This document shows, in pieces, positions 245-59,129 of a stretch of DNA of 64,000 nucleotides (within the stretch, counting starts at the first letter, position 1; every line of letters begins with the position of its first letter). The DNA comes from Bigelowiella natans CCMP2755 (taxonomy: Eukaryota > Protista > Cercozoa), in contig ADNK01000588.1 of assembly GCA_000320545.1 (NCBI GenBank), positions 24,994 through 88,993 of the forward strand, read 5' to 3'. The translations under genes were made by a program, and so were the position numbers. The notes beneath the pieces are model-generated. The model made no database searches. It was not told where the DNA came from and saw only the letters and a program-made list of their open reading frames with translations.

Positions 245-784
245 ATGGGACAAGCAATAAGTAACGTCTGGAAGAAGTTCTTCGCCAACAAGGAGATGCA
301 AATACTAATGCTCGGGCTCGACGCCGCGGGAAAGACCACGGTGCTCTACAAGCTGAAACTCGGTGAAGTGGTTACGACCATCCCGACAATCGGCTTCTGC
401 CTCGAGACTGTTGAGTACAAGAACATCAACATGAATGTTTGGGATGTGGGCGGGCAGCAAAAGATCCGTCCCCTTTGGCGTCATTACTATCAAAACACAG
501 AGGGACTTATCTTCGTCGTCGATTCAACCGACAAGGAGCGTCTGGAGGAGTCAAAAGAGGAGCTGGACAAGATGTTCCAAGAGGATAAGTTGAGGGACGC
601 AGCTGTCTTGGTCTTTGCAAACAAACAGGATCTTCCCGGGGCTCTCAATGTAAAGCAAATCACGGAGGGGTTAGGACTTGACAAGCTGCGTCGTCGTTGG
701 TATGTTCAAGGAACCTGCGCGACGTCAGGGGATGGACTTTATGAAGGACTAGACTGGCTTGCCTCCGCTGTCAGTAAGAAATAA
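245..784 (+). CDS. ARF: ADP-ribosylation factor (Arf1-class small GTPase), intronless
   Basis: 179 aa; N-terminal MG myristoylation site, [22 protein letters not shown] and GLYEGLDWL motifs. Confidence 0.97.
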
Positions 785-7503: not shown

Positions 7504-8521
7504 AGTGTTATAGTGTGTATAATACAATACTCTAAGATATACACACCATCGCCATACGTTAACCACTGGCGGCCATAACTTCTCGCTTTTCCTTTTTTTG
7601 TTCTGTTGTCCCTCCACCCTCCCCCCCTGCTCCTCGCCGCAAACCCCCCCTTCGCCATCCTCCATTGCTTCCTTAGGCACGGCCTCCTCTCTCTACCAGA
7701 TGTTTGGCGTGCAATGTGACGTCGCAGTCATCACGTCGCGTGAGGGGGGGGGGGAAGTCGTTTATTTGTACGATGTGGTGGAACAGGATATCGACGCGTT
7801 TCTTCGAGACATTTTTGCTCCCTCCCCCCCCCCAACCGAGTACCTAACGCTCTCGTTCGAGTACATGCCGGAGATTGAGAACAAACTAGTGTGGGGGAAT
7901 AGCGGCTCGAAATACGCAAGTGACAATCCGGCAAAACCGCACAACAACCAGGTCGTCGTCGTCGTCGTCGGAGGAGGAGGAGGAGGAGGAGATGTGAGAT
8001 GGGACAGCTGTTGCGGTGGCATGATAACATAGAATAAAATATGGCGTATTCACACGTGCATCAATCGCTGTGCTCATCAGTTTGTCCACCCTACAATACG
8101 CTACTGGAACAAGGAAGCGCCGGTCGCCTACAAGGTACACTGCTGCTTAAAGCCAAAGCTGCCTCCGCTCCCGTTGTCATCACACATGCGGCCTCGACAC
8201 CGACGGCCATTGGAAAGTGGGATTGAATGCACGGATGTTGTTAATGACGCACGTGTTGTGTTCTTGCTATCTCCGTGTGTTTCTGTCTATGCGCGTAGAG
8301 TGTGGAGGCCTATGCGGAAGAGCAGCTTGTTCCGCGAGCGACGGCGGAGCTGTATCTAGTAGAGGACCTGAATCTCAACTATCGCAATCCAGTGCTGCAC
8401 CTGCGGCCTCTTGACCGCTTCCTGCAGCGCATACGAACAGCTGCCATCGTCCGCCCTGATCCAGAGTGAGCGACGTGACATGCTATAAGTTGTTATTGGT
8501 CTAAATGCCGTCTATAAATGT

Positions 8522-8561
<40 letters not shown>

Positions 8562-8830
8562 CCTTCTCAGTGGAGGGGACGCGAGTCTTTAGCCTTCATC
8601 AAGATCAGGATAGATTCTCTTCTTCAAATTTCCGAGCGAGCAGCGGCGTGTCATTATACATTATTATTCATTTACGATTATTTATGCTCGTCCCCCCCCC
8701 CCCCCCCCCCAGGTACTCGATGTCCTGGTTTTGCGATTGGTGCGAGGAGCCTGATCCTGCTTGGCGTGTTGCGTTGCGGAGACGCTGTGGCGATGACCGT
8801 CAAAACGGTGTATGCAAAGCATTGCTGTGA
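5022..8830 (+). CDS. FOXRED2-like FAD-dependent oxidoreductase, paralog B (about 8 exons)
   Basis: Signal peptide MGGRSAFLPLLLLGLG; DYCVIGAGPAG; NLRHDWHS; VGGGNSAFE; ENTHYPGSLRSAN; SSGGLVHGFRY; collinear with paralog A to the C-terminus CKALL*. Confidence 0.9.
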
Positions 8831-9218
8831 CGAGAATACTATGAATGTACGTTGCCACGCAGCCTCAATTGAGCGACAAGTCACATCGTCATTGTTATAG
8901 AATTATTACAGCGACCGAGCTATGTTATATTGCTTCGAATATATGTGTATAAATGCACTACATCATCAAAGCAACAATAACGTAGCTCTACTATGGCTGC
9001 TGATCGAATGGCGTTAGCTGAATTAGCCGCAAGCGCGCGTGCTGCGCCCAGTGCATACAGGCAGCTGAACTAGTGAAGCTGCATGATTTCATGTATGTGA
9101 CTAACGTATAACACGGTTCCAGACACTGCATATAATTTATTAAGCGAATTTCGTGCATTGCTATATCTGACACATACAAGCAGCTTCTAGCTGGCTTTGA
9201 GGCCTCATATATAGCTTC

Positions 9219-9419
9219 TCAGAAATTATACGTCTGTCGCGACCCTCCCTTGTTGAGCTTCTCAGTGCCCTTCCCCCAGGCGGCCTCTCCGACGCGTGAC
9301 CTGAAGGAGGGAGAGCAGGGGGGGAGAAGATGGAGAGGGAGACCAACAGCATGGAACATGGTAAACACGAATATTTATGTGAAAATTAATGCAAACGCAA
9401 ACATATACTCACGCACTTG

Positions 9420-9501
<82 letters not shown>

Positions 9502-9584
9502 ACACCTTCGGTTTATATATATATATATATATGTACGTTTCAGGAAGAGCTTCTACGATGTCGTCCACGTGCTGCAATTGTACG

Positions 9585-9621
<37 letters not shown>

Positions 9622-9622
9622 T

Positions 9623-9678
<56 letters not shown>

Positions 9679-10073
9679 TGTGTGGAAGGAGAGGTCACTA
9701 GCTTTCCAATCAGCATCCATAAATGCACGAACAATTACATGATCCAGCTGGAAGCCCAGCGTGCGGTCAAAACCCTTAATCTCACCCAAGGTGTTATAAA
9801 GAGAGACGAGGTAGGATGCGCCGCTGCCAGAATCACCAACAGCTGTTACGATATCCCTGGTGGCGGTATTGATGATGAGGGGGGAAAGGGAGGGTGATGA
9901 GTGAATGATATGTAGTAGAAGATGCAGAAGGTGGAAATGAAGGTGGAGATGATGATTAGGACGCGGGGATTTGCTTCTTGGGTCAATAATTCCGAAAAGC
10001 AACAACCTGGCAAGATCTGTATTATTTGAGAGTTTGCTGTAGAGACTATGGTCCTCGTCCATCACGTAACTGA

Positions 10074-14413: not shown

Positions 14414-14610
14414 GAACACAAGTTGCAACGACTTGATCTGAATATCTATAATCTGATCAGAGAAGAATGGAATTAGAAAGTGAGACCAAATATCACATGT
14501 GTCGTGAATGACGTTGGCGTAGGTTGATCTTGCTCTAACGCACGCGCAATGGCCTTGCGAATGAATCCACCTATGCTCCGCGTTTGGATGGGACGTTGCC
14601 CCAGCGATAC

Positions 14611-15088
14611 CACTGCACTGCATGACACAGCATGCGGATGGCTAGATGAGCGCATTTGGCCGATTTGCTCATTGATTGTTGATTGTGCGCTGAATTGCAG
14701 CAGCGCGTGCACACTGATGACAATTTCTGCAGATGCAAACTGCATGCTATCAATGCGTGCGTTGTGTCCATTGTGTTCTCCCCAAAGCAAAGCGTGTGTC
14801 CTTGTGGTTGTGGTTCAGGCGTGCTAGCGTGCGCCACAGATGTGCGTGAACATTGAAGCAGGTGTGTGTGAACTTGCATCAAACGAATGGACGATCAATT
14901 TCGTCGCCATCATTTCACACGAAAACAAATTTCGGTCAAGAGAGCAATCAGATCGGTAGTCATCCTTCATCGACATCAGCCTCTGACTGACATGCCATCT
15001 GGAAGGTGTCGCATCGATCATGAAGCATGTTTCGAGCAATTTCAGCAGACCGATGCGATGAACTTTCGCCTTCGATGAGATTTCAGGA
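14611..15088. other. TpA-depleted intergenic tract 1
   Basis: Manual count gives 4 TA dinucleotides in about 480 bp, all in CTA or TAG context; CpG is retained. Confidence 0.85.
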
Positions 15089-15396
15089 ATAAGCATGCGA
15101 CAAGGGCTAAACGATTCTTTTGCTGAAAAACAGAGGCATTTCAGTTCAGCGACGACCTAAAATTTCCTCAACGAGAAGAAAATATAAATCGCGAAATTTT
15201 TCGGGCCGATATTTGTGCTTTTGTAAAAACACGTCTTCGCTTAATGGCGCGTTACGCTTGTAAAATAGTGGGCTTTGATTCATGACGACGAATGGATCTT
15301 GTTGTCGCAGATCAACATTAGAGCTGAAAAGGATACGTTTTAGACCATTTCAAGCCTTAAAATGGTCTGAGAAGTCGAATCCTTTGGGCAACAACA

Positions 15397-15810
15397 ATGA
15401 GTTCGGGATCTACTCGATCGCCAAAGGTGGTGGTGGAGGCCAAATTTATGAAGAGGAGCTGGGAGGTCGATGGAAGCACCAGCGTCATCAATTTGAAGCG
15501 AAAGATTCAAGTAAGGACGTATCTTCGCTCTTGCAAGATACCGAAACGCCCTCAAGGAACTAAACATGTCACGTTGTGCAGGAACAGACTCGAATTCCAG
15601 TTCTTCACCAGATTCTATTGGCTAATGGGAAGCCTCTGCTTCATGGTAAACATGCCGTTTGCTTGATACCGTCGAATTTAGTTCTTCAAGCCCTATTCTC
15701 AATGTTTCTAGGAAATTCAAAATTGTTGGACTGTACATCGTTGGTGGTAGATGAGGCTGAGGAAAAAATAGCTAATATCACGCTAACGACGTGCCTTGAA
15801 CCAGTGACGG
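15397..15810 (+). other. Ubiquitin-like domain (N-terminus of the fusion)
   Basis: WEVDGSTSVINLKRKIQEQTRIPVLHQILLANGKPLLHGNSKLLDC resembles the ubiquitin pattern [44 protein letters not shown]. Confidence 0.8.
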
Positions 15811-15969
15811 TACTGCAGATGATCGTTACAAAAACTTGGGAAAATGAGACCTATTAATGCATTCGATAGGATAATATCGACAAGATCGTCCGCCAGCTTG
15901 ATAGTGAGAATAGTTTTTTCCGGGAAGAAGCAGTAGTTCTTCTGGGTATCGTTGTTATGAATGTAATTT

Positions 15970-16042
<73 letters not shown>

Positions 16043-19000
16043 ATCCGCTTTCGCTAGACAAGGAATCATAGATATCTTGCAATTTCCAGTAAATATAAAC
16101 TTGATTCATTTAGGAATGATAGCGACTCGCTCAACGAATGAACGAGACTTAGTTTTGATGCATAATCCCTTCCCAAAACTGAACCTCATTTGCAAGAAGG
16201 TAGTTAGCCAAAACAAAGCTTATTGTCTTTGCTAACTCGCAATAATTAAATAACTTTACAGAGACCGTCCAAATCTACCCTGCAAAGCTGTGCACGATGT
16301 AGTTTCCCGACGGAAAAGATAGGCTGATCAATTAATTGCTGTGTATCTGAAATAGGTATCGCAAGTTTGTGCTCAGGAAAACCAGAGCCAAAACTGAAAA
16401 TGGTAGTGTGATTAATGATGAAGTTCACATAATCACAGATAATTCCCCAAAGGTGAAGCCAGCAATAAAGATCTTGTCGGATTTGATCACATTTTCGGTA
16501 GTTGACCTCGCAAATAAACGAGAACGAGTATATAATTAACGAATTTGTGTAATTCGTCAGGATGCAGAAATTCTTCACCATAGCTGTCGATCACTCATGT
16601 ATCTATCAAACGGTTCTCCATCAATATCAGTGTAGTTTTCGGAAAATCAGTCATCTACTTTTAATTCTTAGGCGATGATGAACTAGTAAAAGCTATATTT
16701 GATGAAGACGACGGTAGATCTTAATTTAAATCATGATATCTTTGAAAACGTGTAATTTCGGCTAGGACGGAAAAAGGGAAGCACATTCTGTCGTCGACTA
16801 GTGGAATTGCTTGGTAAAAAGAGCTAGGCGAGTGTAATAGAAGACAATATGTTAAACAAAATGTTTATAACAATCAGATGGACATGATAATGTTGCTGAA
16901 AGTGTGCTAAAGACACTATCTAATTTCACAATTGCGGAGAGGTAGTACCATAGACTTCATAATTTAGTAACATAGGCCTAATATGGGTACTATGTCGATC
17001 AGTGACGACATTAAGAAAACTCCAAAGAGGAAGAGGTATCATCCCAGACATCTCGCCAAAATCTTGGATTCATAATAACATAATTATTTTGATCATAATA
17101 GTTCCCAGTATGCACCTTAGCCTCTTACTTATCTCATCAAAACTCAAACTTACTTTGTAAAGGTCAATTAGTGGTCCTGAAGATCATTCTCAAATTCTAT
17201 TGGAAGCTGGGGTGCTGCCAGCATTTCAGGGGCTGTTGAAGGTGGCTTAATATACACAATCACAATAATCCCTCTTTATAAAGGCTCTTTCATAATAAGG
17301 AGAAAGCAAGAACTCTGTCACTGAAGGCTCTTTGCTGCAGAGTAATATCTATGTTGGTGCAGCACAAAAGGTTAGGGAATTAAGTTTGTTCGAAGTAGGA
17401 AATGTGTTTGATGTGTGAAATTCTAGGTGTATCTCCATCATCATAAGTTCTGGGCTTCTGCGCACCATCCTTGGATTATTTCGACCTAAAAAATCGTTTC
17501 TGCCAACTCCGATCACATCCCCTACGAAGGCATTTTGCATCTTATACGTGAAACCATTCCTAGAATAGCTGAATCCTGGAATATTAAAGGTTCCGCAATG
17601 GTCTTCAGAATCAATGGACAACCTCAGGGACTCTCCCGAATTCATCGCAGAGGGTGTACTTCTCGAGGCAGTCTGGGTGATGGTGAACATCACCTGCGAT
17701 GGTCAGAACTATCCCTTTGATCTGCTTTCCAAATTTGGTCAACCTAAAAAAACATCATCATACGCACAGGAGGTGCAGAGGATAAGCTAAAAGCCTTACG
17801 GTTGGGAATGATAGGTCTGCGTTTTCCGAAGTATTACTTAATTTCACTGAAAATCTTCTCATTGATTAAATGCGAACTAAAGATGCGTTGTGCCTACTAC
17901 TGGGAGAGCTGGATGAAGAGATCCTACTTCTAGGTGGCGCACGATAATTACTGCCAGAGATGTGTAACATTTTTTACGTATCTACGTAACAGCATTGGAA
18001 GGAATCGACAATTTGTTAAAAGCTGGAAAGGGTCTTGCAAACGTAATCCTTGAGGATGAGGAAGAATCATCTTCGAGCGATCCCCCCAATGGTATTGACA
18101 GCCCTTCCAAGTTGTTCGGGTGTCATCTGAGATTGAGTTTTTAGTTCTGGAGGAAGTGCGTTTTAAAGGCCTAGACATGATGCTACAGCTTCTCACCGAC
18201 TCAAACATTACTCATGTGGTAACCTGACTCTCAACTGCAATTTCGCAACTGGCATATAACTTCAGTTTTCCATCGTCAAGGTAAAGCAGAAAGTAGCTAG
18301 CATAATGACCCAGTACTTTCCAGAAGAAGCCAAAAGTTTTGATGCTGGTATGGAAGATCTTGAGGGTGAGCAAGGAGAAAGCGGTACTAACAAAATATAC
18401 AAATATTTAGTTAACGAATGTAACTTTATGAGCCCGATAGAAAATGTTCCTCTCTGAAATTATTATCATCACATCAGAAATGCCGAAAGAAAGGAGTTCG
18501 AGCGGCAAGCCACCTCCATTAACAATTCCAGAGAATAAAACAGTAATTTCCACGACCCAGAAAGATGGCAATAATTTTGCAGGCGAAGGCGAGGAAGCCC
18601 ATGAGAGTGATGATGACGATGAATCTGTGCACAGACGTAACTGTTCTAACGTTTCGAAGAAGCAGATAGAGTCTCATCACTGAATTTTATTACAGCTTCA
18701 ACAGAATCAATCAAAGTCGTAGTTAGATGCCGGCCATTTATAAAGGTAATTTCAAAACGTTGTTTAATGGTAATTACACTTAATGGTATACATAGTCACA
18801 TTATATCTTCATTATAGAACGAATCAAAAGACTGCTTGGACGTGATTCATGTGGATTTGGTATCATCATTCGCCTACAAATTTCCAATCTAAAGAACAAA
18901 ATCAAAATACCCTGATTCGTAGGAGTCGAATAGAATATTAGTAAAAGATCCCAACCAGTCTGGATTTAATCCTGAGGTAGATCATCCATGGAAACAGAGT

Positions 19001-22000
19001 TGTGCGTGCCTCATAAAATTGTCCTTAAATACAGATGAAGGAGAGTTGGAGAAAGTTTTCGTTTGACACTGTGTACGGAAGGGTAACGTGAAACATTGAA
19101 TATTAATGAAAGCCAAACTCCGACAAAATGCAACACTAATTGAGCTTCAAATAATCTCTAAAGGAATCGAAGCAGAAAGATATTTACAAGCACTCAGTTT
19201 CAAAAATGGTAACTCGGAAAGCCTACGTACAAATTGCCTTTTATATAAGTATTTTCAATTTCTTACACAGGTTCGCAGGCTCTTGAAAGGATTCAATTCG
19301 ACGTAATTTCCTTGTTGTGATAGTGTTTTTGCTTTAATGATGACAAGCTATCCTTCATTTACTCAATAACACAGAATATTCGCCTACGGCCAGACATCCT
19401 CGGGCAAAACCCACACCATGATGGGTAATGTCATGCTCGCCAAGATGAAAGCATTGAGCGCTCTCATCGATTGGTATATTTTTTATATATTATATCTTAA
19501 AGGAGAACTACAAGATGACCATTTGGAAGGTAGTTTACGCCGTTTCATTTCTCAGAACGGATATCTTAGTATTGTTAATTCAGGAATCACCCCTCGTCTC
19601 ATACGAAGCTTATTTTCCTTGATTGAGAAAGGTTGGTATGCAGCGAAAATATTCAATGTCGTTTCAAAATCCGTGTCATCGCCGTTACACGCAGGAAAGG
19701 AACGAGGAAATACGTTCCTCATCACCCTATCGTACTTAGAAATATACAATGAGAAGGTAGATATGAAATCATGAAATTACCGGTAAAGTGGATATTTGAC
19801 CCGATATGCCCAAATAGGTTTACGACTTGCTCACGAGACAAAGAAAGCGCGGAATACAGGTACTGCGATAATTACCTTTTAAAACTATGGTGTGAATACT
19901 CCTTGGCATCTTCAGGCCAGAGAATCGTTACAGATACGTCAGAAAGGAAACGGTCTTCTTTCCTGCAGCTCCCCAAAATCTTTGAGTGACATGTACATTG
20001 ATGTTACAGGCTTCCATGTTCCAAAGCTCACAAAGCATGTTCGGCAGATTTTGTTCAATTATCCTTAGCTGTATGTCATTTCATTGAGAAGCGAGAATTT
20101 TAATTTTTCCTCCTTAAAGGTTATCACGGACGATCAGCAAATGCTTGCATTTATTGAAATGGGTAGGAGCTCCTGCTTCATTTTTCTTGGGTTATATAAG
20201 TTTGCACTAATTGACAAAGGTTCTCGGGCAAGATCTACTGCAGCTACTGCATTAAATAGTGCCAGCTCGAGGTAAACTAGCACATCGAAGGGAAAGCAAC
20301 TCCCAAATTCACGTTCGCAATTGTACAGATCACACTCAATGCTCATCATCAATATTGAGAAGGGTAGCAGCGACGAGGTATGCAAGGACTCAATATTTTA
20401 TCTGTAAGATTTTTCGTTACTGTATTCTCTCCAGAATATGAGGAACATCGTGAGTGCTAAACTGAATCTTGTCGATCTGGCTGGGAGTGAAAGGTACAGC
20501 TCCATCACCATTAATGTGGCTTAGTGGAATGGGTCTAAACAAGTTTCGAAATTGTTTAGATTCCAGGATCAAGACATGAAAACTCAGAAGGAATCCACAT
20601 CCATTAATCAGTCGCTCACAGCGTTAGCAGGGGTGAGGCAAATCATCTACTCTCTAGCATTAGCATTAAAACAACATCTTATTCCTATATCTGGAGTAAA
20701 CAAATTAAACACTAATTAAGGTTATCGCCGCTCTCACGTCAAATAAAAAAGGTTGTTCAACTTGATATCGACAACCTAGTACATTAATCGTACTCTCTCA
20801 CCGCGTAGGAACGTTTGTACCCTACCGCAACTCGGCATTGACAAAGCTGCTCCGCGATTCCCTTGGTAAGTCATGTTCTCATCGATTGCCAAGTAGTGAG
20901 CTAAAGATGTTTCGTAAATTGCATTTTATCAGGCGGAAATGCATCAACTTTGATGTTTGCCAATATAAATCCATGCGATCGAAATCTAAATGAAAGCGTA
21001 AGAGTTTCGCTTCACGACGAGGATAACCCATAGCTTTAACATTATAAATTTTGTACCTCAACTTAAGGTTTCTACCCTCCGTTATGCTGCAAGAGCTAAA
21101 AAAATTATGAACAAGCCAAAAGGTAAACTAATTTTGCGAAATATTTTGACGAATCAATTACCACTAGTTCCCATCACATCTAATTTTTCTCCGCCCACAT
21201 AACAGTGAACCAAAATCCGAAGGACGCATTACTCACAAAGCTTCAATCTGAGATAAAATCTCTACGGCGGTAGTCGCATTTGGTATAAAATGCGGCTGGG
21301 TCAAGCCGTCTTGATATTCAGTATTATTTTCAAGGCTGCTCGACAAAAAAGACAAGTACATCGAAAAAATGCAGGTCCAGACACCGAAAATAATCGTCGA
21401 GGAACCTTCGGAAGAAGAACGTCGGCGGGTTAGCAATAATATCAACCATCCCAACGAAGACATATTCTCTGATTCGAATGGAATTTCCGTTCCTAAAAGG
21501 CAAAGATCGAGGCCGAGAAGCATAGAGAATTTGTGAATCAGGCAATACGTAAATACGTGGGGCTGGAAATACCTTTTATCCCATCATAAAATCAGCAAAA
21601 ATAAGGCTGCAAGCCTGCAATTTATAATCTCTATCCTTGAAGGTGCGTGAAGATCTCCTCAACAGACTCAACGATGCAAAGTCTTCCTTCATCCAAGGGG
21701 GTATATATGTATGTAAATATTCCTCGATGCATAGAAGTGAGAGATATGGGATAAGAAATACCTTCGTCTCAACATGTTGCGCGAGTCTATGTAGATACCA
21801 AATCATCAGATTAATTTACTGAAAGTTAAAAAAAAAATCGATTTGACATTGTGTATTTGAAACGCAGGTTCACCACGGGCACGAGGTACTAGAGGTGCAT
21901 TTTATGGATACCTAGGTTCTGAATGAGTAGTTCATGTACGTAGACTCTAGGGGAAGTAGACGCGGAGGCAGTAGAGCTGTAAGAAGAAGAATGACAGGTA

Positions 22001-25000
22001 TCCTCGAAAACATAACAGCGAGGAAAACATAGAAAGATGGGGGAAATCAAGGAGGAAAACCATGCCTGAATATGTCTTTAAAAAAATTCTATCAGTGGTT
22101 GCAGCAGGCAGCCTTGTTCACACGATTCCAGCTCGAGCTATTGACGGTAATTAAGTGAAATGGAGCTAAAACTAATTAAAATAAAAGATGGTACGTCTTC
22201 GAATCTTCCTTGCCTGAAGCTGAATTTGAATTTCCTAGATGATGACGCTGAAAGTCCCACAAACAATCTACCTGGGATAGATCCATCGATACTTCGATCG
22301 GTGCGATGATTCCTCTGACAGCAGTGAGAAGGCCAGAATGGAAAATTGACCAACATCATCAATTTCACATTTAGGCTCCTCATTTGAGTCGTGAAGACTC
22401 AGCCCCAGCGCCAGGAACAGGGTTCGTTATCACTTTTGAAATACGAATTATGCTATGAGAATATCAACAGTATCTGGATTTTCCTCAGGTACGGACGAAG
22501 GGGAAGCAGACGTCTCAGCATCTCACAAATGGTGCGGTGCGAAGATTGCACATCTATACCTATCCATCTATCATCCAAAAAGCAGCCTTCCATCTCTTGT
22601 CTCCTTGCGCTTTCATACCAAACTTTTAGGCCCCACAGATTGGCATGCAAGATGAAATTCAAGCAGGAGTTTTCAAGGCAATGCGAAAAATGCGGAGATC
22701 GAAGGTCTGGTGATGTTCGCAACCTCAGATAATATCATGACATGTATTGATCCAATCCATTTAACAATTTTCTAAGGCAAAATTCCAGTCACAAACCATA
22801 GAGTTGAAAGACATACTCGAGTAATGCCCTGGACACTAGTGGGAAGCACACATGATTGGTCATGATGAATCACTCGCCACTGTGTCGATCAGAATGACGA
22901 AAGTGAGAAAGGTGGAGCTGGAAACAGATTTAAAGGAATCCGAAGAGCAGAAAAAAGAACTAGAGGAGGTTCTTAGCACACAAAAAACAAAAGGAATCTT
23001 ATTTGTTTTTAAACGTACGAAAATTATAATTACTCATCAGAATTTGACCTCGACTCTGAGTATAAACGCCGAGCTGAAAAGTAAACTAGAAATCGCAAAC
23101 GAGCAGAACGAAGAGTAAGAAAGCCACAGACAGCCTAGACTGACGACTTATTGCGAAGATCTAAATTAAAATCGTACACTTTAATCCTCAGGCTTCAAAG
23201 CGAGTTGACAGCTCTAAGAAAACAGTTGCTAAATGTCACCATCACTCATAAGTCTGACGAGCTTATCATGCCCCGATCCCCTCGGAATGTGACCAAAGGT
23301 CTTCATTAGACAATAATTATCTTCGAACACATATGAATAATTTTACATATAAATTTTGTAAATATTGAATTGATTGAATAAGGGGTCGAAGAAGGCTCCC
23401 TTGTCATGGAAATCAAGGTGAATTTTCTCGCACATATTTCGAAATAGAGGAGAAGCGTTTACTTCTAGATCACTGAATACGTGTGCAGGCTTATTCACAA
23501 TATGTGAACACTCTTCTGGCATATCATCCACTCCTCATGACGACTCGCACGTTGCCCATTCAACCGACGTGCGTACTGTATTTTCCTCAAATGAGATATG
23601 TTAGGGCAGAATATTGTTATTTATACTATATCAGTGATATCGAAGACTTCGCCGAAAAGATGAGAGATGGGATTCTACCTGCAGTGCTCATAAACTTTGC
23701 GGTATTTTGGTTGTTTTGAATTGAAGAACTATTTTTCATAATCATTCGCGCCTCTTTTATTGTCGCAACTTTCCAGGTTCCAAACACGATCGATGAGAGA
23801 GTATTGAATAAGCCAACAGCTTCGAAGCCTCTCTCCGAAAAGGTCATCCGAAATCTGTTGGAGCGATGACAAAACCTGTCTTCCTCTGATGGAAGCTTGC
23901 AACCCTCAGGAACGAAGGGAGAACCTGATCCTTGTATTTGAGACATGCAAAGGGATAGGTGTTGAGGTGACAATGACTTTCAGTTTATTACCTCTCAACG
24001 ATGTGGATATTATCTGAAGCAATTTGCCTTCTAAGGTTGGAGACCTCACAGTTGACGCACTCTTTCCTACCGGATCTGTCGCGAACACAAATAATATACA
24101 GAATCCAGTGCCTAGAAAGTCTTCAACGGCACGCCACCAATCATCTGCGGTAAGGAAAGTGCTACATTGAACGTCAAAAATTTACACTTGTGGCTCATTG
24201 ATGGTGTTTGCGATGGTTAAATAGGTATCACTAAAAACTGTGTGCACGTTTGCCTTCCGTATCATTTCCTTCATCACTCTCCGCCGCAACGAACTCTTGT
24301 CCCATCCAGAGGTTTCTGATTCAGATCAATGTCTCCATCGTGTTGGCACTCTGCCGTTTATTACCTGCATCCCCCAAAAGAATGTTTCCTTTTTGAAGTA
24401 GGCGACATCCATTCTCAATACACTCGCATATTTTCTAAGGTCAGAGAAGCTGGAATAGCGCAGGATGATAACGACAGCGAAGACCTCCTCCCATCCAAAA
24501 TTCTTCTAGGTGACTCTCCAAATATTTGCAATTCCAGATGTAAATTCTCAACAATTACTGAGATCGACTTCTTGCTTCTGTAGGATGGACAAATCACATG
24601 CTTGGCAAACTTCGATCAAATACTCAAATCTCAACCATTGTGACATCTGACGCCTTCCCATCTCTGCCTCTCTCGCAGTCCTCATTTTCCGCTAAAGGTG
24701 GCATTGAGAATGCCCTAGTGATGTCGAAATGATGATGCTAATATAAGGGGCAGTCGAAGTAACCTCCGTTGAAGCTAATGGATTTTAACACTTTACTGTA
24801 GGAAACAAAGTTCCAGCTTTTCTAGTTCTGGCAATCTCTCAAAAAATTAGAGGACCCCAAACTGTAAGTTGGCTCGCATCCAAGATGAAGGTCCCTTCTT
24901 TTGCAGAATCGCGGGAATCCGATGCAGGGAGCGGCATCTCACCAGCTGACTTCGCAGCAGCCGGGGAGATTCTTCCGAAAGAGGTGACTGTAATTGTTCA

Positions 25001-27275
25001 CTCGAGAGATTGGAGAAGATTTATCTTGCTTCGCTGCTGCGATGCAGGCAAAGACGTTCTTGATCAATGAGGATGACTTCGAACGGAAGCATGACAAGGA
25101 AACGGAGATGTCCCTGAATAGACTTGCTCTGCTATTTACCGGTCGGTTCTCCACTAGCAGGAATTTCCTAGAGATGATGATTTTTGTGGCGCATGATTAG
25201 GAGCGGTTCTGAAGCATAGCTTCCCACTAAAGTTCAATGGACTCCACGGGGATATGGGAGGCCATCCGGAGGTTCACAAGGCAATCAAAGTTTTCCAGCG
25301 ATGGTGTCGCCGCTAATAAATGAGAAATGAATTCGTTGTCAGAGTAAGACAGTGCGGAATACTGTAAATCCCGTTGAAAAGTTGATTAGACGTGACAGGA
25401 AAGGTGAACAAGCGGCTAAGGTTTGAGAATGCGCAGAGTGTGTAATAGTAAAGTATGTTTCCTTTCAGCTGGGGGAAGTATTGTAAGCGTAAGTGATGAC
25501 ACCGACATTGACGAAGATGAAGGTACAGGGTTTATCATGGGTGGCAAACACGATTTGATTCTCGCTGCACTTGATGGCAGATGGTGCTGGTGACGTCGAA
25601 CCGAGCCAAGAGAAAGCTGTCAGGTCTTCTTTCTGGAAGGAAGAAGTCAACCCGGTTCGGATCGTCTGACTGTTTGCTTGCAAAACGTGCAGGATGTGGA
25701 TCAATAACATCGGGGTTCAGAATCGGTATATCCACAGGCTCCTCAACGCCTGCTCCAATGGGGTATGAAGCCATGTACGATTCACAGATGCTGATGATTC
25801 CATCGATTCAATCATGCGTAGGTACTGCTTCTTCGGCTACTTGACCACATCGCAAAATCGGTGACACAGCAAGCTTCGTCTAATCCACCCGTTGTTCGTA
25901 GCATGTCTAATGTTGGTATTAATTGCTTCATGTAGTCGGTTGTTGATTGGAAGAAAGCCTATCCGAAGCCAAGTAATGTCGATTTGACGCCTCTGTTGTT
26001 TTCAAGTGTTAATTGCATTCCCCACCACTGCGAATACCAAAGGTAACAAGTTTCGAGAGCTTGCAAACTGCCAACAGTTCATCGAAAGATGCAAGGAAAC
26101 TCCATTCAACTTCAAGGTATGTTTCTATGTGAGCGGTTTAGCACCGGAAGTGATAATGCACGTTGCAGGTAGGAACAACCACTGGACAGGATATAAATGA
26201 AAGGCACTCAAAGGTTGATATCTTGCGTAAATCACCTCTTAATTTGCATTTGCCCGACGACATACTCAACCATTTCTTTGCAGCACGTGCTCTCCGTGAC
26301 GTGGCAGCTCAGAAAGTTTCATATGTAGGATAGCCAGCGAACGATTTAGTTGTCTTTAGCATTGGTGGGGTTACTGGGATTTCTGTACAGGTTCGAATTC
26401 CTAAAGAGTATCTACGTGCGAAAGTTCGGCGGCGGTCAAAAAACAGCTGAATCCAAAATAAGGATTGATGAGGGGAAGATCGCGCAGTGGTAGTCATATT
26501 CTTCCGACTGTGCAACAATTCTAGGCAGTTCTGAAATATTTGCATTTGTAATACAGGTGCATGTCGACAATCGAGACTGCATTAGATGAGAACGGAGGGT
26601 GAATAAATAAACTATCATTAAGATTGCTTTTCGCATTTAATAATTACAATTTGTATAGATATCCCCCTGAAGCTTCGCACGTTGACGTAAGATCATCCTC
26701 GTTTATTTTTTGTACGCACAATAAATTTACCATATCTGTATTATTCCTTTTTCAAGCTGGAAGGAATTGGAAGTAAAATAAAAGGCTTTGACGAGAAGGT
26801 CATCTCAGAGCTATGTAGATTGCTACTTAGCTGATCTTCAGGAATTCATGAAATCAGACTTTGAAGACTGGCTTGTATCTCCTGCTCCTCATTTGGGCGA
26901 AGGATCCAGAAAGCATAGACTGGGCGAATGCTTCCACTGGTAAATCCGCCGCTAAAATAAAGGCTAGGTGGCTCAATAAATTTCGGAATTGGTGCTAGGT
27001 GTCACGCGCGATCAAAGACTGGGTAATGCAACGTATGCCATCTCCGTCGCACGTAAAATGGGATGCACAATTTTTTTGCAGCCGGCCGACATCATCAAGG
27101 TAGTCGAAAAGCAACTTTCAGATACGTTCGATGCTAGTTGAGCTTCGCCTTCGAGACAAAAACACATGCGCCAGCACATTGTATTAATTGTGTTGTTGTT
27201 TGTTTCATTGCGTGTGTGCGGCAGGTGAGACCAAGAATGATCCTAAGTTTTGTTAGTGCAGTGCTAGCTACATGA
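15397..27275 (+). CDS. Multidomain fusion: ubiquitin-like - importin-alpha-like ARM repeats - kinesin motor - coiled coil - fimbrin/plastin actin-binding core
   Basis: Dozens of short GT-AG introns. The module junctions were traced exon by exon with phases matching and no stop; not every internal exon was resolved. Ends [16 protein letters not shown] (TGA 27273-27275). Confidence 0.8.
15871..18365 (+). other. Importin-alpha-like armadillo repeats (about ARM3 to C-terminus)
   Basis: REEAVVLLGMIA..RDLVL, SLCSGKPEP, VKPAIKILSDLI..DAEILHHSCRSLMYLS, FCRRLVELL, EAVWVMVNIT and KVASIMTQYFPEE are collinear with importin-alpha. Confidence 0.85.
18696..21270 (+). other. Kinesin motor domain (kinesin-2-like neck)
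   Basis: [99 protein letters not shown]. Confidence 0.97.
23489..27275 (+). other. Fimbrin/plastin-type tandem calponin-homology domains (CH1-CH4), no EF-hands
   Basis: [126 protein letters not shown]. Confidence 0.93.
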
Positions 27276-27339
27276 TCTAGATGATTGTTGCTCATGCCTG
27301 TCGCTCACATTTCTAGGTAGATATTCATTTTGTGTTTGT

Positions 27340-28080
27340 ACATGCATGACTAGAAGTGCGTCTAATCTAGCAGGTCACACATTTGATCGAAATCAGTTCG
27401 TTTTGCATTGCCCAAGCGATCTAGCGATCGATGCGATGTGAAATGTCATGCTTAGACATTCATGTGTTGATTGCACATGCTAGCATGGACGTTTAGACGT
27501 GGCGAAAAAAAACGAAATGCACATGCACAGCTAGTCAGCGAAACTTGCACCTAGCAAGCAAGCTAGCTAAAAACCATCATCTCTAGATCTCTTCTTGTCT
27601 AGAGTATTGTCTAGATTGTGCTTGCGCGGCATGCTAGCATGCTAGCATGTTGCGTGCACACATTGATCTCTAGCTCTACACAACGCTAGAATGGCTAGAC
27701 TCACAAGGTCTGCTAGTCTGGCTAGCTAGCTAGCTAGGTAGATAGCTAGATAGTGATGATGCCATTCAGACTCACTAGCTCGATTAGATGTCTAGATGAG
27801 ATGGCATGCACAATCTGGTTGCCATAGCTGCGTGTCTAGATGTGCAGACATGATGATGATGGCTCGTGAAGCGTTTAATTTTGCGATGCCCAACTAGCCA
27901 ATCACCTTTTTAGAGACCTAGCTAGCTAGCTAGGAGAAAGTAGCGTCAAGATTTGCGCGCATGTCACAAAATGAAGATAGCTGGCAAACTGGTTCGCTTG
28001 CTAACTTGCTCATACATCTAGCTAGCTAGACATGTTGAGATGCTAGCATGCTGCTAGCTAGCTAGAATGCCGAAGAAATA
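27340..28080. other. TpA-restricted, CTAG-rich intergenic tract 2 between convergent genes
   Basis: The large majority of TA occur as CTAG, CTA or TAG, with GCTA runs; CATG and TGCA are abundant. Confidence 0.85.
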
Positions 28081-28289
28081 GTTCGTAGTGTCGAACCGCA
28101 TGCTGTGCACTGGTCATTTTCGAGCACTTCTATGTTGAGTTTCGGGGCACATTTTGTGAATGTAATTTGTGCAGCTATATAAGATATCGATCCGCGTGAA
28201 TAAATGTCTAGATGTTGACACTACAGCGATGCAGCTGAAAGCAGCAAACGGACTGTGTGTTCTGCCGCAAACGACTATCAAATCAAAAG

Positions 28290-29906
28290 CTAGCGGCGAG
28301 ATAGCAGCATCCAGGCAATGGCTCCCATCCCAAGAAGAATCTCCGATCTGTATTCCTCCCACAACGTCGAGGTTTGCAACGGTCGCCTGCAGCGTTTATT
28401 CATAAAACCACACACACGCACGCACGCACGCACGCACACACGATACAGCTCGAATCATGCACGGATATGCGGCTAGGACAGCCTCCTAGGAGTAGCACAT
28501 CGAAAAGGAATTGTCAGCAATATAGAGAACCTTTCCTCCCCCGAACCCCGATTATTCGGACCCGCCGCCAGCATTTCATTCGACTTCTTCAAGCTTGCCT
28601 ACGAGTGGAGGTCAGTCAGCAAACAACAGAGCCAACAACAGGGGCAAGAGCATATTCAGCAAGTAGCGGTGTCAGTCCGTCCTTTCGAATGGCAAATGTC
28701 GATGACGACGATGATCGCCGATAATCTCAATAAAATAACGTCAAAATCGAGAAGTGAGCAAAGGGGGGGAGGGGGGGGGGGGGGGGGTTACTCTTTTTCG
28801 GTAGTCATATTTCTCACTATGTAGCCAACCACGCACTCTTTGACGAGAAGTAATAATACCTCGAGATTTGCCACTTGCCTCTTCAGGGCTTGCTGCTCGC
28901 GCTTCATCGCCTTCGTCTCCATCCACATCGTCGCGTAGTCGCTGGTGGGTGGGGGGAGGAAGAGAGACGCCAAGGTCAGATTGAGGATTATGATGCTCGT
29001 GGCGAAGGTGATGGTCATGGTGGTGGTGGTGAGGATGATGATGACAATAACGACGGCTATTATACGCTTCATTTCTTAATTCCAAAACATAAACTGCGGG
29101 AACCAAAAAGGAAAAGAAAGCACGGTGCCGTCGTTGTCGTGGTCGTCATCACTCAAGACCGAGTGAATGGCGTTTCCAAACAAGATTTGTTTTTTTTGCG
29201 AAGGAGGGAAGGGGGGGGGGGGACTAAGGCCTGCTGCTGCTGCTGCTGCTGCTACACTACTATAGCCACTACGAGGACGATAATGACGTTGCACTACATG
29301 TGATCAGGTGGTAGGTCAGTCTTCTCCGAGAGATTTGCGACACCTGGAAGCATTTTGCCTACAAAACACACACACACACATACCCATCAGTTGATTATAT
29401 CAATTATGCTGCTATTATTTCTCAATTTTACCTTCCATGAGAACGAGCGACGAGCCTCCCCCTGTACTTGCATGTGATATCTGCTCAGCAACAGGCAAGG
29501 ATCCAACCTAGAGTGTGTGGGTGGGGGGGGGGGGGGGGGGGATAAATCTGATCATGCCTCATGCCTCTCAGCGAAGCAGCAGCAGTAGATGGCGCCAGAA
29601 GGAAAGCAGAGCCAATCAATCATCGTCATCATCGTCATCATCGTCATCATCGTCATCATCGTCATCACCAAACCTTGAATTTCCTGGAGGCCGCTCCGGT
29701 ATCCCCCCCCCCGATGATGGTGGTGCACCCCATGGCAGTTGCTTTGACCATCTCGACCTGAGAAAGACAGAAAAGGGGGAGGGGGGGAGTGAGGAGGGGG
29801 GGGGTTGGAGTAGTGATGCTTAGTGCTGCTGTTCCTGCTGCTGATGATGATAATGATGATGATGATAATATTTCTTCTTACAAGAGCAGTGGTGAGAGTC
29901 GTCGGT

Positions 29907-53702: not shown

Positions 53703-53940
53703 CTAATTTCAACATTCGTGAGTATATTCTTGTCACTTTCGCTTTCGCAGCTACCACTGCTGAGTGTGACACAGTTGACGCGGTTGTGCATGAAAATATA
53801 CAGCGTAACACTGCGATGCTTAGCTAGATTTGCAAATCACAACATGTCTACCAGCTTTAGTACATTAGACGACATGCAGCTGCAGAATTTGCAGGCTGCA
53901 AACCTGCCAGGAGATGCACCGCAGTGTCACTAGCCATTAC

Positions 53941-54420
53941 TTGATCTATCGGCGAAGCAGGGTAGTGGGATGTGGCGGTTGGACTAGCGCAACGAGGCCG
54001 CTGCTGTGCTAGTGCTTTTGTCGTGGCAGACAAGTTGTTTCAGCACAGCTCGATGCGTTGCGTTTCTGAGATCATTGGTCGCGACCAAGGCCGCCTGTCC
54101 AATTGTGCATGCATTGCGCTAACAGCTGGCGTTTGCGCGCATTGAAGCGTTGTGCATGTCCTGTGCATGTGTCACGTCATGTGCTTGCAGACACAGCACT
54201 ACGTTGGTGCATGAGTGCATGACGCAAGACTAGTGCTCTGTCGTTTCATTGAAATGTGCATTGCTAAATTTCAAAACACATCGCAGACTTCGCGCTCGGA
54301 ATTCGATGACATCACTAGATGCAATTGACTAGATGTGCAGATCACATCAGAAATGAATCCGCTAAAACCGTTTGCAGTGCATGTGGAAAAGTGAAACCGA
54401 CGGGGAACATGCTACCATTT
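53941..54420. other. TpA-depleted intergenic tract 3
   Basis: Manual count gives 12 TA in 480 bp, all in CTA or TAG context. Confidence 0.85.
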
Positions 54421-54655
54421 GATGCTGTAATTTCCATTGACAATTTTCCCCACTACTAGGAAACATTGGTTATTTACCTGCGACATGGGGGAACGCGTTG
54501 TTTGCACGTACGCCATTGCTGTGAGAGCTCATTGCCACGGGAACCCCCGACGGGATTCGCCGGGATTCGCCGGGATTTCACCACGGTAGGAAATCCTTGT
54601 CGCGATATGGAAACACCATGTATTTCATGTCAAAACCAAACCGAGCCGAGAAAGG

Positions 54656-58583: not shown

Positions 58584-59129
58584 CGTGCCGTATTGAAGAT
58601 CACAGGAATGGGGGAGAAGGGTCTATCGATCTCAAAAAAATACATGGACGGTGAAGATCGAGTGAGGCTCGTGCATCATTGCTTGCATAAAGATTTAACG
58701 AAATTATTACACGAAAACACATCACTTCTGAGCATCTAGGCATGCACGCGATGTGCAAGTTGCAGACAGCCAAACAAGCAAGCCATTGAGGAGCTGCACG
58801 CAGCTCGCATTGCATGATGTGCACGTTGTCCACGCTGAGACGATTCGATGCACAGATGTTCCGCGCACGTCATTGCATGCAGCTCGCATTGTGAGATTGA
58901 CATCCAGTGATGCCATCAATTGAGCAACTATCTACACACGCCGTGATCGTCTTCCCTTGAGCAGATGTGGCGGCCTTCAGGAAGATCCTGCTCATGATTT
59001 CTCCAGTTTGACCTCACTTTGGACGTGCAGTTGTTCATCATCATTGTTTCATCCTTTCACGCAGACACAAAGCTGTGAGCACAGCGACGGTCAGTCATGC
59101 TGGCATGCTAGCATGGGGCTTTCGGACAC

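What the first reader, a model, noticed from the sequence alone, without database searches (positions are those of the whole stretch)
18696..27275. Kinesin-fimbrin chimera: intact-looking motor whose tail is a four-CH fimbrin core without EF-hands
Seen: P-loop, switch I and switch II are intact. About 14 phase-compatible linker exons run without a stop into ..[22 protein letters not shown] (CH1). Known: plant KCH kinesin-14s carry a single N-terminal CH domain, and EF-hands regulate many fimbrins. Inference: a Ca2+-insensitive actin cross-linker carried along microtubules. This holds even if the upstream importin junction is wrong.
Basis: partly seen in the sequence, partly recalled or inferred. 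Interest (0 to 1): 0.85.

Follow-up and report, generated by a model that had tools for sequence, protein, structure and literature searches.

The report
Kinesin motor fused to fimbrin tail
This alga has one gene, seen as spliced RNA and conserved in a second organism, for a microtubule motor whose tail is an actin-binding fimbrin module, so one protein could tie the cell's two filament systems together.

Summary

**RNA evidence.**
- Two assembled transcript contigs from one JGI sample (L027, L029) map to window 15756-27407.
- L027 has 2 mismatches in 5,397 mapped bases and about 85 exon blocks.
- It contains all motor exons except 20010-20038 (present in L029), exactly 14 linker exons between 21270 and 23298, the exon ..[12 protein letters not shown], and the CH exons up to the stop at 27273-75.
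- One 833-aa reading frame on the contig carries both Kinesin (172 bits) and CH (28 bits).

**Second organism.**
- A metagenome scaffold (L028) encodes the kinesin second half, linker and fimbrin core as one intron-free 1385-aa frame (P0007, E 3e-123).
- Arm repeats plus the first part of the motor (to the P-loop) lie just upstream.

**Gene size.** The gene is larger than stated: (UBL)-ARM-kinesin-coiled coil-fimbrin, at least 1,797 aa in 86 exons.

**Caveats.**
- CH2 is not detectable; only CH1, CH3 and CH4 are.
- Both contigs carry a frameshifting join in the motor and one retained intron, so the full-length frame rests on a genome model with canonical splice sites.
- Actin binding, bundling and Ca2+ insensitivity are untested inferences.

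The scan had noted this same stretch once more (s1-706839), not on other DNA.

The parts
15756..18383 (+). Upstream part of the same ORF: 20 exons encoding armadillo (importin-alpha-like) repeats. The transcript contig starts at 15756 and the frame is open at its 5' end.
   Evidence: L027 maps here. ORF L027:1-1668 gives weak Arm/ARMC5 matches. In the orthologue, Arm scores 93 bits in the same ORF as the start of the motor.
18478..18636 (+). Exon encoding an acidic low-complexity spacer (..MPKERSSS..DDDDESVHR) that joins motor exon 1 at 18696.
   Evidence: Junction 18636|18696 is GT-AG in L027 and in frame.
18696..21269 (+). Kinesin motor domain plus neck linker in 23 exons (18696-18745 ... 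21206-21269), including the 27-nt micro-exon 19503-19529.
   Evidence: Hand model translated. Junctions are in L027/L029. Pfam Kinesin scores 141 and 172 bits. Best solved relatives are KIF3B at 6e-43, KIF4 and OSM-3.
19388..19411 (+). P-loop GQTSSGKT.
20264..20335 (+). Switch I SSRSH, split by the intron 20272-20328.
20474..20491 (+). Switch II DLAGSE.
19953..20009 (+). Intron 11 of the motor. Both transcript contigs keep its first 20 nt (19953-19972) and then join non-canonically. L027 skips exon 20010-20038; L029 contains 20011-20038. The result is a frameshift.
   Evidence: The canonical splice restores the frame and yields GFHVPKLTKHV, which is conserved in P0007 (GFYVPNLTKHV).
21335..21428 (+). 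Linker exon 1: neck coiled coil, LLDKKDKYIEK..EEERRR.
   Evidence: L027 junctions; conserved in P0007.
21500..21541 (+). Linker exon 2 (AKIEAEKHREFVNQ), followed by a GC-AG intron.
21643..21700 (+). Linker exon 3 (VREDLLNRLNDAKSSFIQG).
21868..21885 (+). Linker exon 4: an 18-nt micro-exon (GSPRAR).
   Evidence: Present in L027; SPRA is conserved in P0007.
21944..21997 (+). Linker exon 5 (DSRGSRRGGSRAVRRRMT).
22096..22146 (+). Linker exon 6 (VVAAGSLVHTIPARAID).
   Evidence: My ab initio chain had chosen a different acceptor at 22052.
22239..22300 (+). Linker exon 7 (DDDAESPTNNLPGIDPSILRS).
22375..22421 (+). Linker exon 8.
22489..22531 (+). Linker exon 9 (GYGRRGSRRLSISQM).
22630..22704 (+). Linker exon 10, with the conserved basic motif [14 protein letters not shown].
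   Evidence: The stretch [11 protein letters not shown] is invariant between the two organisms.
22777..22820 (+). Linker exon 11 (AKFQSQTIELKDIL).
22893..22968 (+). Linker exon 12: start of the second coiled coil.
   Evidence: weak match to the crescentin rod family.
23041..23114 (+). Linker exon 13: coiled coil.
23192..23298 (+). Linker exon 14 (..LQSELTALRKQLL..PRSPRNVTK). Its donor is at 23299. If this donor is not used, the frame stops at TAG 23307-09.
23383..23417 (+). Bridge exon (G)[11 protein letters not shown]. Its in-frame ATG at 23406 is an internal Met; paralogues also have a Met near this position.
   Evidence: Junctions 23298|23383 and 23417|23489 are in L027. The paralogue comparison was by eye on the outputs.
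23489..24149 (+). CH1, in exons 23489-23568, 23635-23701, 23777-23842, 23910-23966 and 24036-24149.
   Evidence: Pfam CH 28.2 bits; fimbrin 1RT8 at 1.3e-12; the alga's own canonical fimbrin at E 6e-13.
24225..25403 (+). Divergent region in the position of CH2, in 7 exons. Only remnants are recognisable ([24 protein letters not shown]).
   Evidence: Exons. Pfam blank. hhalign matches only the last helix. The AlphaFold model is poor.
25404..25468 (+). A 65-nt GT-AG intron retained in both contigs, which gives a stop there. Removing it puts the 833-aa and 295-aa ORFs in one frame.
25469..25623 (+). Acidic inter-domain linker, in exons 25469-25522 and 25581-25623.
25693..26324 (+). CH3, in 6 exons.
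   Evidence: Fimbrin core 1PXY at 5e-45; Pfam CH; 43% identity to P0007.
26391..27275 (+). CH4 and the C-terminus, in 7 exons, with the stop TGA at 27273-75.
   Evidence: Fimbrin ABD2 3BYH at 1.5e-40; Pfam CH; exons.
27276..27407 (+). 3' untranslated region, at least as far as the end of the contig. It runs into the CTAG-rich spacer.

Best explanation
**Shown.**
- Window 15756-27275 (+) is one gene. The genome is apparently that of the chlorarachniophyte alga Bigelowiella natans.
- Its spliced mRNA encodes a single polypeptide of at least 1,797 residues.
- The domain order is armadillo repeats, preceded by a ubiquitin-like region upstream of the transcript contig; an acidic spacer; a complete kinesin motor with neck linker; a neck coiled coil; a basic, probably disordered hinge; a second coiled coil; and a fimbrin-type core without EF-hands. 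The core has CH1, a degenerate CH2 position, then a well-kept CH3-CH4 actin-binding domain.
- The same order of parts exists in a second, intron-poor organism.

**Inferred.**
- The motor and neck resemble kinesin-2, and the neck and coiled coil follow the motor. The protein should therefore dimerise and walk towards microtubule plus ends.
- The fimbrin core in the tail should hold actin filaments. The protein could then tether, slide or carry actin along microtubules, or anchor microtubule-bound motors to actin.
- A dimer would carry two CH3-CH4 domains, so it could cross-link actin even if CH1-CH2 no longer binds.
- With no EF-hands, calcium would not control it in the way it controls plastins.
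For: **Transcript evidence.**
- Transcript contig L027 (5,680 nt, JGI sample 3300017095) was found through P0001.
- It maps collinearly to 15756-27407 with 2 mismatches in 5,397 nt. Of its 83 splice junctions, 79 are GT-AG, 3 are GC-AG and 1 is non-canonical.
- A second contig, L029, carries the same ORFs.
- The 833-aa ORF L027:2160-4658 contains Pfam Kinesin (172 bits) and CH (28.2 bits, above the cut-off).

**Orthologue.**
- P0007 (1385 aa) is one ORF without introns on ENA scaffold L028. It scores E 3e-123 and carries Pfam Kinesin (248 bits) and CH (103 bits).
- The ORF just upstream holds Arm repeats (93 bits) and the first part of the motor, up to the P-loop.
- The genome-derived model aligns collinearly with both ORFs at 34%, 39.8% (E 7e-176) and 43% identity.
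- Linker motifs are conserved.

**Family assignment.**
- The tail's best solved relatives are fimbrin and plastin cores.
- The motor's best relatives are KIF3B and OSM-3 and KIF17/KIF3/OSM-3 by name.
- No EF-hand is present.
Against: - No single contig shows the whole frame.
- Both contigs come from one assembly. Both carry a non-canonical, frameshifting join at 19972 in the motor and a retained intron at 25404-25468. L027 also has an N-run artefact in exon 18923-18976.
- Read-level RNA data could not be obtained, so isoform proportions are unknown.
- CH2 is not recognisable, so the first actin-binding domain may be non-functional.
- No motility, actin-binding or localisation data exist.
- Only one orthologue was found.
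Confidence: 0.78

Rival explanations
1. There are two or three neighbouring genes on one strand (ARM protein, kinesin, EF-hand-less fimbrin). The long contig would then be a read-through or assembly chimera.
For: - Before the transcript was found, the stretch 21700-22340 had weak intrinsic support. Shuffling 150-nt segments there lowered the chain score by only 3-12.
- In-frame ATGs exist at 21934, 22896 and 23406, and a stop at 23307-09 lies 96 nt before the last of these.
- The alga's other fimbrin-like genes are not next to kinesins.
Against: - Every exon-exon junction from the motor through the linker into CH1 is present in the contigs, including an 18-nt micro-exon. None of that stretch is unspliced DNA.
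- The frame is open across it for 833 aa.
- In another organism the same parts are one uninterrupted ORF.
- Intergenic DNA in this genome averages about 1.5 kb (32.9 Mb over 21,708 genes, PMC12730881). No comparable unspliced gap remains between 15756 and 27275: the longest intron is 168 nt.
Confidence: 0.03
2. The fused gene is real, but in this alga it is mostly spliced unproductively or is decaying. Little or no full-length protein would then be made.
For: Both available contigs carry a frameshift in the motor (19953-19972 kept, with a non-canonical join) and a retained 65-nt intron with a stop. CH2 has degenerated.
Against: - All three breaks are removed by canonical GT-AG splices present in the genome, and each restores the frame exactly.
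- The exon missed by L027 is present in L029 and encodes a segment conserved in P0007.
- The catalytic motifs are intact.
- About 40% identity is kept over the whole length with a distant orthologue, including linker motifs.
- The N-run artefact shows that the assembly mixes spliced and unspliced reads.
Confidence: 0.1
3. The protein is made, but its tail is not an actin bundler of the fimbrin kind. Either only CH3-CH4 binds actin, giving a simple anchor, or the CH domains have another partner. That partner could be microtubules, as for the CH domains of EB1, Ndc80 and CAMSAP (from my own knowledge).
For: - CH2 is unrecognisable in both organisms.
- CH1 scores only just above the Pfam cut-off (28.2 against 26) and gives a weak CAMSAP_CH match in P0007.
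- The CH2 position holds 270-300 divergent residues.
Against: - CH3-CH4 match fimbrin ABD2 strongly (1.5e-40 to 3BYH, 5e-45 to 1PXY), and fimbrins and plastins are the only significant solved relatives.
- CH1's best matches are the CH1 of fimbrins.
- Dimerisation through the coiled coils would still give two actin-binding domains per molecule. This last point is an inference.
Confidence: 0.3

Closest known systems
Plant KCH kinesins (kinesin-14 with a calponin-homology domain, e.g. GhKCH1/2, OsKCH1)
   Same: A kinesin motor and a CH-type actin-binding module sit in one polypeptide and link microtubules and actin (PMC1434745, PMC4774884).
   Different: - KCH proteins have a single CH domain N-terminal to a kinesin-14 (minus-end) motor.
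- Here a kinesin-2-like motor with a C-terminal neck is followed by a whole fimbrin core, and Arm repeats precede it.
- PMC1434745 states that all CH-domain kinesins it found belong to kinesin-14.
Fimbrin/plastin (Arabidopsis fimbrin core 1PXY, S. pombe Fim1 1RT8, plastin-3 7R94)
   Same: The tail's best and almost only solved relatives. The CH1 ... CH3-CH4 order and the C-terminal end are the same.
   Different: - There is no N-terminal EF-hand pair.
- CH2 is degenerate.
- The core is attached to about 1,150 residues of ARM, motor and coiled coil.
- The alga also has a canonical fimbrin with two EF-hands elsewhere (G000:C3552).
Kinesin-2 (KIF3A/B, KIF17/OSM-3)
   Same: The best named and solved matches of the motor. 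The neck motif [10 protein letters not shown] resembles the kinesin-2 INEDPKDALL, which I recall from my own knowledge.
   Different: - In my tree the motor sits in a separate clade made of chlorarachniophyte kinesins and unnamed sequences, next to but not inside the KIF3/KIF17/OSM-3 group. The tree had no outgroup.
- The tail is unrelated to kinesin-2 tails.
Armadillo-repeat kinesins of plants (ARK/MRH2) and the kinesin-2 adaptor KAP3
   Same: Arm repeats are combined with a kinesin (PMC1434745).
   Different: In ARK proteins the Arm repeats are C-terminal. Here they are N-terminal, look like importin-alpha, and are preceded by a ubiquitin-like region. KAP3 is a separate subunit.
Spectraplakins (ACF7/MACF1, Shot)
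   Same: One protein carries a CH-type actin-binding domain and a microtubule-binding part.
   Different: Spectraplakins are passive cross-linkers without a motor, and their actin-binding domain is a single CH pair.

Membership tests
Kinesin superfamily | P-loop GxxxxGK[ST], switch I SSRSH and switch II DxxGxE all present | tested here: met
   [8 protein letters not shown], SSRSH and DLAGSE are all present in the spliced model.
Kinesin superfamily | Full-length match to the motor-domain profile (PF00225) | tested here: met
   Transcript ORFs cover profile positions 39-157 (141 bits) and 178-327 (172 bits). The gap between them is the exon 20010-20038 region, disturbed in the contigs but conserved in P0007. 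Profile positions 1-38 ([11 protein letters not shown]..) were seen by eye only.
Kinesin-2 family | Groups with KIF3/KIF17/OSM-3 in a phylogeny that includes other kinesin families | tested here: inconclusive
   - The best solved hit is KIF3B (149.8 bits), but KIF4 scores 143.7.
- The tree of the C-terminal motor half puts the motor in a sister clade of chlorarachniophyte kinesins and unnamed sequences. The tree is midpoint-rooted and contains no other families.
N-type (plus-end-directed) kinesins | Neck linker and dimerising coiled coil directly C-terminal to the motor core | tested here: met
   ..[41 protein letters not shown].. follows the motor. Directionality itself was not testable.
Fimbrin/plastin | Four CH domains forming two tandem actin-binding domains | tested here: inconclusive
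   CH1, CH3 and CH4 were found. The CH2 position is occupied, but neither Pfam, hhalign nor the fold model recognises it.
Fimbrin/plastin | N-terminal pair of EF-hands | tested here: not met
   No EF-hand loop occurs in any + frame of 17900-27300. No EF-hand family is found in the transcript ORFs or in P0007. The same motif scan does find EF-hands in the alga's canonical fimbrin.
Fimbrin/plastin | Closest relatives by sequence are fimbrins rather than other CH proteins | tested here: met
   All 7 significant solved matches of CH3-CH4 are fimbrins or plastins. For P0007, alpha-actinin appears only at 3.5e-4 against 2e-46 for fimbrin.
Fimbrin/plastin | Binds and bundles F-actin | not testable with these tools
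   Needs co-sedimentation and bundling assays.
Plant KCH kinesins | Kinesin-14 motor with a single CH domain N-terminal to it | tested here: not met
   The CH domains lie C-terminal to the motor and form a fimbrin core. The motor's best matches are kinesin-2 and kinesin-4.

The most novel reading that the evidence does not exclude
This protein is the founding member of a conserved, self-contained integrator of the two filament systems in rhizarian protists. In this reading a plus-end kinesin carries actin filaments by its own fimbrin core, for example to build or feed filopodia or reticulopodia. Its N-terminal importin-alpha-like Arm domain acts as an internal latch: it binds the invariant basic motif of the linker ([15 protein letters not shown]) much as importin-alpha binds its own IBB domain, and so switches the motor off until a signal or cargo releases it.
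Probability: 0.12. Interest if true: 0.8.

Novelty: new variant of a known kind. Interest (0 to 1): 0.62.

Why it matters
**What is already known.** Cells coordinate microtubules and actin mostly through separate adaptors. Motors that bind the other filament system directly are few. From my own knowledge and the papers cited, these are plant KCH, KCBP and myosin X.

**What is new here.**
- A kinesin-2-like motor is joined to a near-complete fimbrin core and to Arm repeats. I found this combination in no paper and in no large protein cluster.
- It is conserved between two distant organisms, which argues for function.

**What it offers.**
- A natural test case for whether a kinesin can transport or slide actin filaments.
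- An example of how fimbrin's actin-binding domains behave without calcium control.
- Evidence that chlorarachniophyte kinesins of this clade have swapped tails repeatedly (fimbrin, PIP5K, PH).

It also shows that gene models in this extremely intron-dense genome can be checked against culture transcriptomes held in JGI.

Tried and rejected
**Reads and self-annotation.**
- Looking up a neighbouring 263-aa ORF to reach the genome's own annotation found no record. Records of this genome may be left out of that tool.

**Searches with single exon pieces.**
- Pfam on single stop-free pieces of the CH region was almost blank, because the exons are too short.
- The search of protein representatives with the CH1 piece gave 0 hits.
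- The search for homologous proteins with the piece holding linker exon 3 found no candidate.

**Intrinsic gene modelling.**
- My splice-site matrices, trained on 21 introns, were overfitted.
- The exon-chain search chose wrong exons in five places: 22052 and 22220 as acceptors, a wrong donor on linker exon 14 (23288 instead of 23298), and the wrong frame at 23383 and 23469.
- Intrinsic modelling therefore could not settle whether there is one gene or two. It gave only overall support.
- Composition did not help either. Tracts free of TpA and rich in CTAG mark 14608-15089 and 27339-28350 but are not a general gene-boundary mark.

**Paralogues.** The other fimbrin-like loci have no kinesin nearby.

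**Wider family.**
- Two scans of JGI metagenome contigs for more family members found none.
- The protein atlas showed no cluster with this architecture.
- The sample name of the orthologue's scaffold was found in no relevant paper.

**CH2.** The AlphaFold model of CH1-CH2 was too poor to use (pLDDT 46).

**Arm domain against the basic linker motif.** Complex prediction gave no verdict (score 0.30, mark 0.34). This is evidence neither for nor against binding.

**Handling of the joined model.** The joined genome-derived protein model has no reference and was sent to no database search. It was built and aligned only inside local scripts. Database searches used single pieces or the transcript contig's own ORFs by reference.

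Full report
**What the window is.**
The locus is eukaryotic and extremely rich in introns. Earlier notes of this scan name the genome as Bigelowiella natans. The assembly has 3,736 contigs and 91.4 Mb, which fits the 3,736 scaffolds listed for that alga in PMC12730881. A close paralogue in the database is labelled jgi/Bigna1. I treat the organism name as a well-founded inference.

**Checking the observation from the DNA alone.**
- Stop-free pieces of the + strand gave Pfam Kinesin matches between 19370 and 21030.
- I traced 22 motor exons by hand from 18696 to 21269, all with GT-AG borders, exons of 29-73 nt and introns of 56-159 nt. Their joined translation is a complete motor with [8 protein letters not shown], SSRSH and DLAGSE.
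- Single pieces of the tail gave almost nothing in Pfam because the exons are so short.
- Comparison with the alga's own canonical fimbrin on contig C3552 identified CH1, the start of CH3, and CH4.
- The gene ends at TGA 27273-75 and runs into a CTAG-rich spacer.
- A relaxed EF-hand pattern found nothing in any + frame of 17900-27300. The same pattern does find EF-hands in the canonical fimbrin and in one paralogue.

**One gene or two: what the DNA could and could not say.**
Several two-gene readings were open.
- The last linker exon can read on to a stop at 23307-09.
- The next exon holds an in-frame ATG at 23406, only 96 nt further on.
- ATGs at 21934 and 22896 could also start a coiled-coil fimbrin.

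I then ran a dynamic-programming search for exon chains.
- The search was trained on the motor exons only.
- It found a 15-exon chain from 21269 to 23417 that scored 215.7.
- Forty dinucleotide shuffles gave 66 +/- 16, and the reverse complement gave 52.
- Local shuffling left 21700-22340 weakly supported.
- The search also picked wrong exons elsewhere. Intrinsic evidence was therefore suggestive, not decisive.

The genome's own annotation is withheld from the look-up tools. Two searches with short pieces were blank.

**The decisive evidence: a spliced transcript.**
- A search with the 134-aa P-loop piece returned P0001. This 148-aa protein is the exact spliced product of motor exons 4-11 plus a 27-nt micro-exon I had missed.
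- Its contig, L027, is 5,680 nt and comes from JGI sample 3300017095.
- L027 maps collinearly to window 15756-27407 with 2 mismatches in 5,397 bases and about 85 blocks.
- Of its 83 splice junctions, 79 are GT-AG, three are GC-AG and one is non-canonical.
- It contains 21 exons upstream of the motor (20 for the Arm repeats and one for an acidic spacer), the motor exons (all but 20010-20038), and exactly 14 linker exons between 21270 and 23298. It also contains the exon 23383-23417 (..[12 protein letters not shown]) joined to 23489 ([10 protein letters not shown]), all the CH exons, and 132 nt of 3' untranslated region.
- The weakly supported stretch is spliced too. It includes an 18-nt micro-exon at 21868-21885.
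- The ORF L027:2160-4658 (833 aa) runs without a stop from motor exon 20120-20162 through the whole linker into the CH region. It carries Pfam Kinesin (172 bits) and CH (28.2 bits, cut-off 26).
- The next ORF, of 295 aa, carries two CH stretches (89 bits).
- A second contig from the same sample, L029, has the same ORFs.

**Flaws of the contigs.**
The long frame is broken at three places.
1. An N-run with a repeated, intron-containing copy of exon 18923-18976 is a scaffolding artefact.
2. Both contigs keep 20 nt of intron 11 (19953-19972) and then join non-canonically.
   - L027 skips exon 20010-20038.
   - L029 contains 20011-20038 and the junction 20038|20120.
3. The 65-nt intron 25404-25468 is retained.

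Each break is removed by canonical sites present in the genome, and each correction restores the frame exactly. The resulting genome model has 86 exons (median 54 nt) and 85 introns (median 66 nt). Its frame is open for 1,797 residues, from the first base of the contig to the stop. The exon that L027 skips encodes GFHVPKLTKHV, which is conserved in the orthologue. I therefore read the breaks as assembly errors or unproductive isoforms. The full-length frame has not been seen in one molecule.

**Independent support: an orthologue.**
- Searching with the 833-aa ORF gave P0007 as by far the best hit: 1385 aa, E 3e-123, 37% identity over 90% of the query, with Pfam Kinesin plus CH.
- P0007 is a single uninterrupted ORF (L028:10001-14158) on a 42.9-kb metagenome scaffold with 58% G+C.
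- The ORF just upstream (8472-9854) holds Arm repeats (93 bits) followed by the start of the motor up to ..GKTHTM. Two small introns seem to link the two ORFs.
- Further upstream lies a ubiquitin-like piece that scores 19 bits, below the cut-off.
- The alignment shows invariant stretches in the linker: [42 protein letters not shown] and SQTIEL.
- The genome-derived model aligns with both ORFs along its whole length: 34% identity, then 39.8% over 979 columns (E 7e-176), then 43%.
- In a tree of the C-terminal motor half, the window's motor and P0007 are sisters (support 96/78). They sit inside a clade of chlorarachniophyte kinesins and unnamed sequences, apart from the KIF3/KIF17/OSM-3 group. 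The scaffold may therefore come from a related protist, which is an inference.

**What the parts are.**
- The motor's best solved relatives are KIF3B (6e-43), KIF4 and OSM-3. The best named database hits are KIF17, OSM-3 and KIF3.
- The tail's CH3-CH4 match the Arabidopsis fimbrin core 1PXY (5e-45) and fimbrin ABD2 3BYH (1.5e-40). Only fimbrins and plastins are significant.
- CH1 matches the CH1 of fimbrins (1RT8, 1.3e-12).
- The roughly 270 residues in the CH2 position are recognised by nothing. Pfam is blank in both organisms. hhalign aligns only the last helix, with 3.5% probability. The AlphaFold model has pLDDT 46.
- So 'four-CH' should read 'fimbrin core with a degenerate second CH domain'.

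**How it probably works (inference).**
- The neck linker and coiled coil lie C-terminal to the motor, as in plus-end-directed dimeric kinesins.
- A second coiled coil of about 90 residues precedes the tail.
- A dimer would present two well-kept CH3-CH4 domains, and perhaps two CH1-containing domains. That is enough to hold or cross-link actin filaments while the heads walk on microtubules.
- Without EF-hands, the calcium control known for plastins is absent.
- The role of the N-terminal Arm domain is open. A test of whether it binds the conserved basic linker motif gave no verdict.

**Comparison with what is known.**
- Kinesins with a CH domain are known only as plant kinesin-14 KCH proteins, which have a single N-terminal CH domain (PMC1434745; PMC4774884).
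- Arm-repeat kinesins of plants carry the repeats C-terminally.
- My paper searches and the protein atlas turned up no kinesin with a fimbrin core.
- I rate this a new variant of a known kind: motors or linkers that bridge actin and microtubules.

**Limits.**
- There is no read-level RNA evidence.
- All the RNA evidence comes from one assembly.
- Only one orthologue was found.
- The start codon was not defined.
- There is no functional test.
It was handled only in local scripts, and database searches used pieces or contig ORFs by reference.

Noticed in passing
window 15361-15854 and L028:7498-7998: Upstream of the transcript contig's 5' end the frame stays open (..IPVLHQILLANGKPLL..). It resembles the ubiquitin-like piece upstream of the orthologue (QQILLVNGDPLLNDLATLEDCG; ubiquitin 19 bits, below the cut-off). 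The gene therefore probably starts with a ubiquitin-like domain, as another note of the scan proposed. The start codon was not located.
   Followed up: partly
window 15756-27275: Intron density is extreme: 85 introns in about 5.4 kb of coding sequence, with a median exon of 54 nt and a median intron of 66 nt. There are micro-exons of 18 nt (21868-21885) and 27 nt (19503-19529). Three introns are GC-AG (donors at 17530, 21542 and 25281). The genome averages are 7.8 introns per gene and 159-nt exons (PMC12730881).
   Followed up: partly
G000:C3552:22500-27800 (L001, L003, L026): A canonical fimbrin with two EF-hands (FDKDGNGTIDKSEM, VDVNKDGVIAWDEF), four clear CH domains and long exons. The kinesin-linked copy is therefore an extra, divergent paralogue.
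   Followed up: partly
G000:C2055:38001-58000 (L022, L023), G000:C2715:14001-33439 (L020, L021), G000:C1861:38001-52000 (L024, L025): Three further divergent fimbrin-like genes, each with different sequence upstream on the same strand. C2055 has EF-hands followed by a long coiled coil. C2715 has E/R/K-rich helices. C1861 has PH-domain-like exons. None has a kinesin nearby. Whether the upstream parts belong to the same genes was not settled.
   Followed up: partly
P0009, P0013, P0015 (hits): The closest relatives of this motor carry other tails. One Amorphochlora protein joins the kinesin motor to a phosphatidylinositol-4-phosphate 5-kinase domain (PIP5K, 237 bits). Two others carry a PH domain according to the database's precomputed Pfam column.
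   Followed up: partly
window 27276-28350: The CTAG-rich, TpA-poor spacer begins directly after the stop codon, and at least 132 nt of it are transcribed as 3' untranslated region (the contig ends at 27407).
   Followed up: partly
window 14608-15089: A 482-nt tract without free TpA lies upstream of the gene. Similar long tracts lie at 53938-54427 and 58708-59950. No tract of 200 nt or more occurs between 15090 and 27338; the only one of at least 140 nt is 25533-25704.
   Followed up: partly
window 19425-19694: The DNA between the P-loop exon (19375-19424) and exon 19695 is free of stops in the coding frame, so genomic DNA reads as one 134-aa open piece. This piece is what allowed the database search that found the transcript.
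   Followed up: no
window 245-784: An intron-free ORF of 179 aa that looks like an ARF-family small GTPase ([20 protein letters not shown]..). This was judged by eye only.
   Followed up: no
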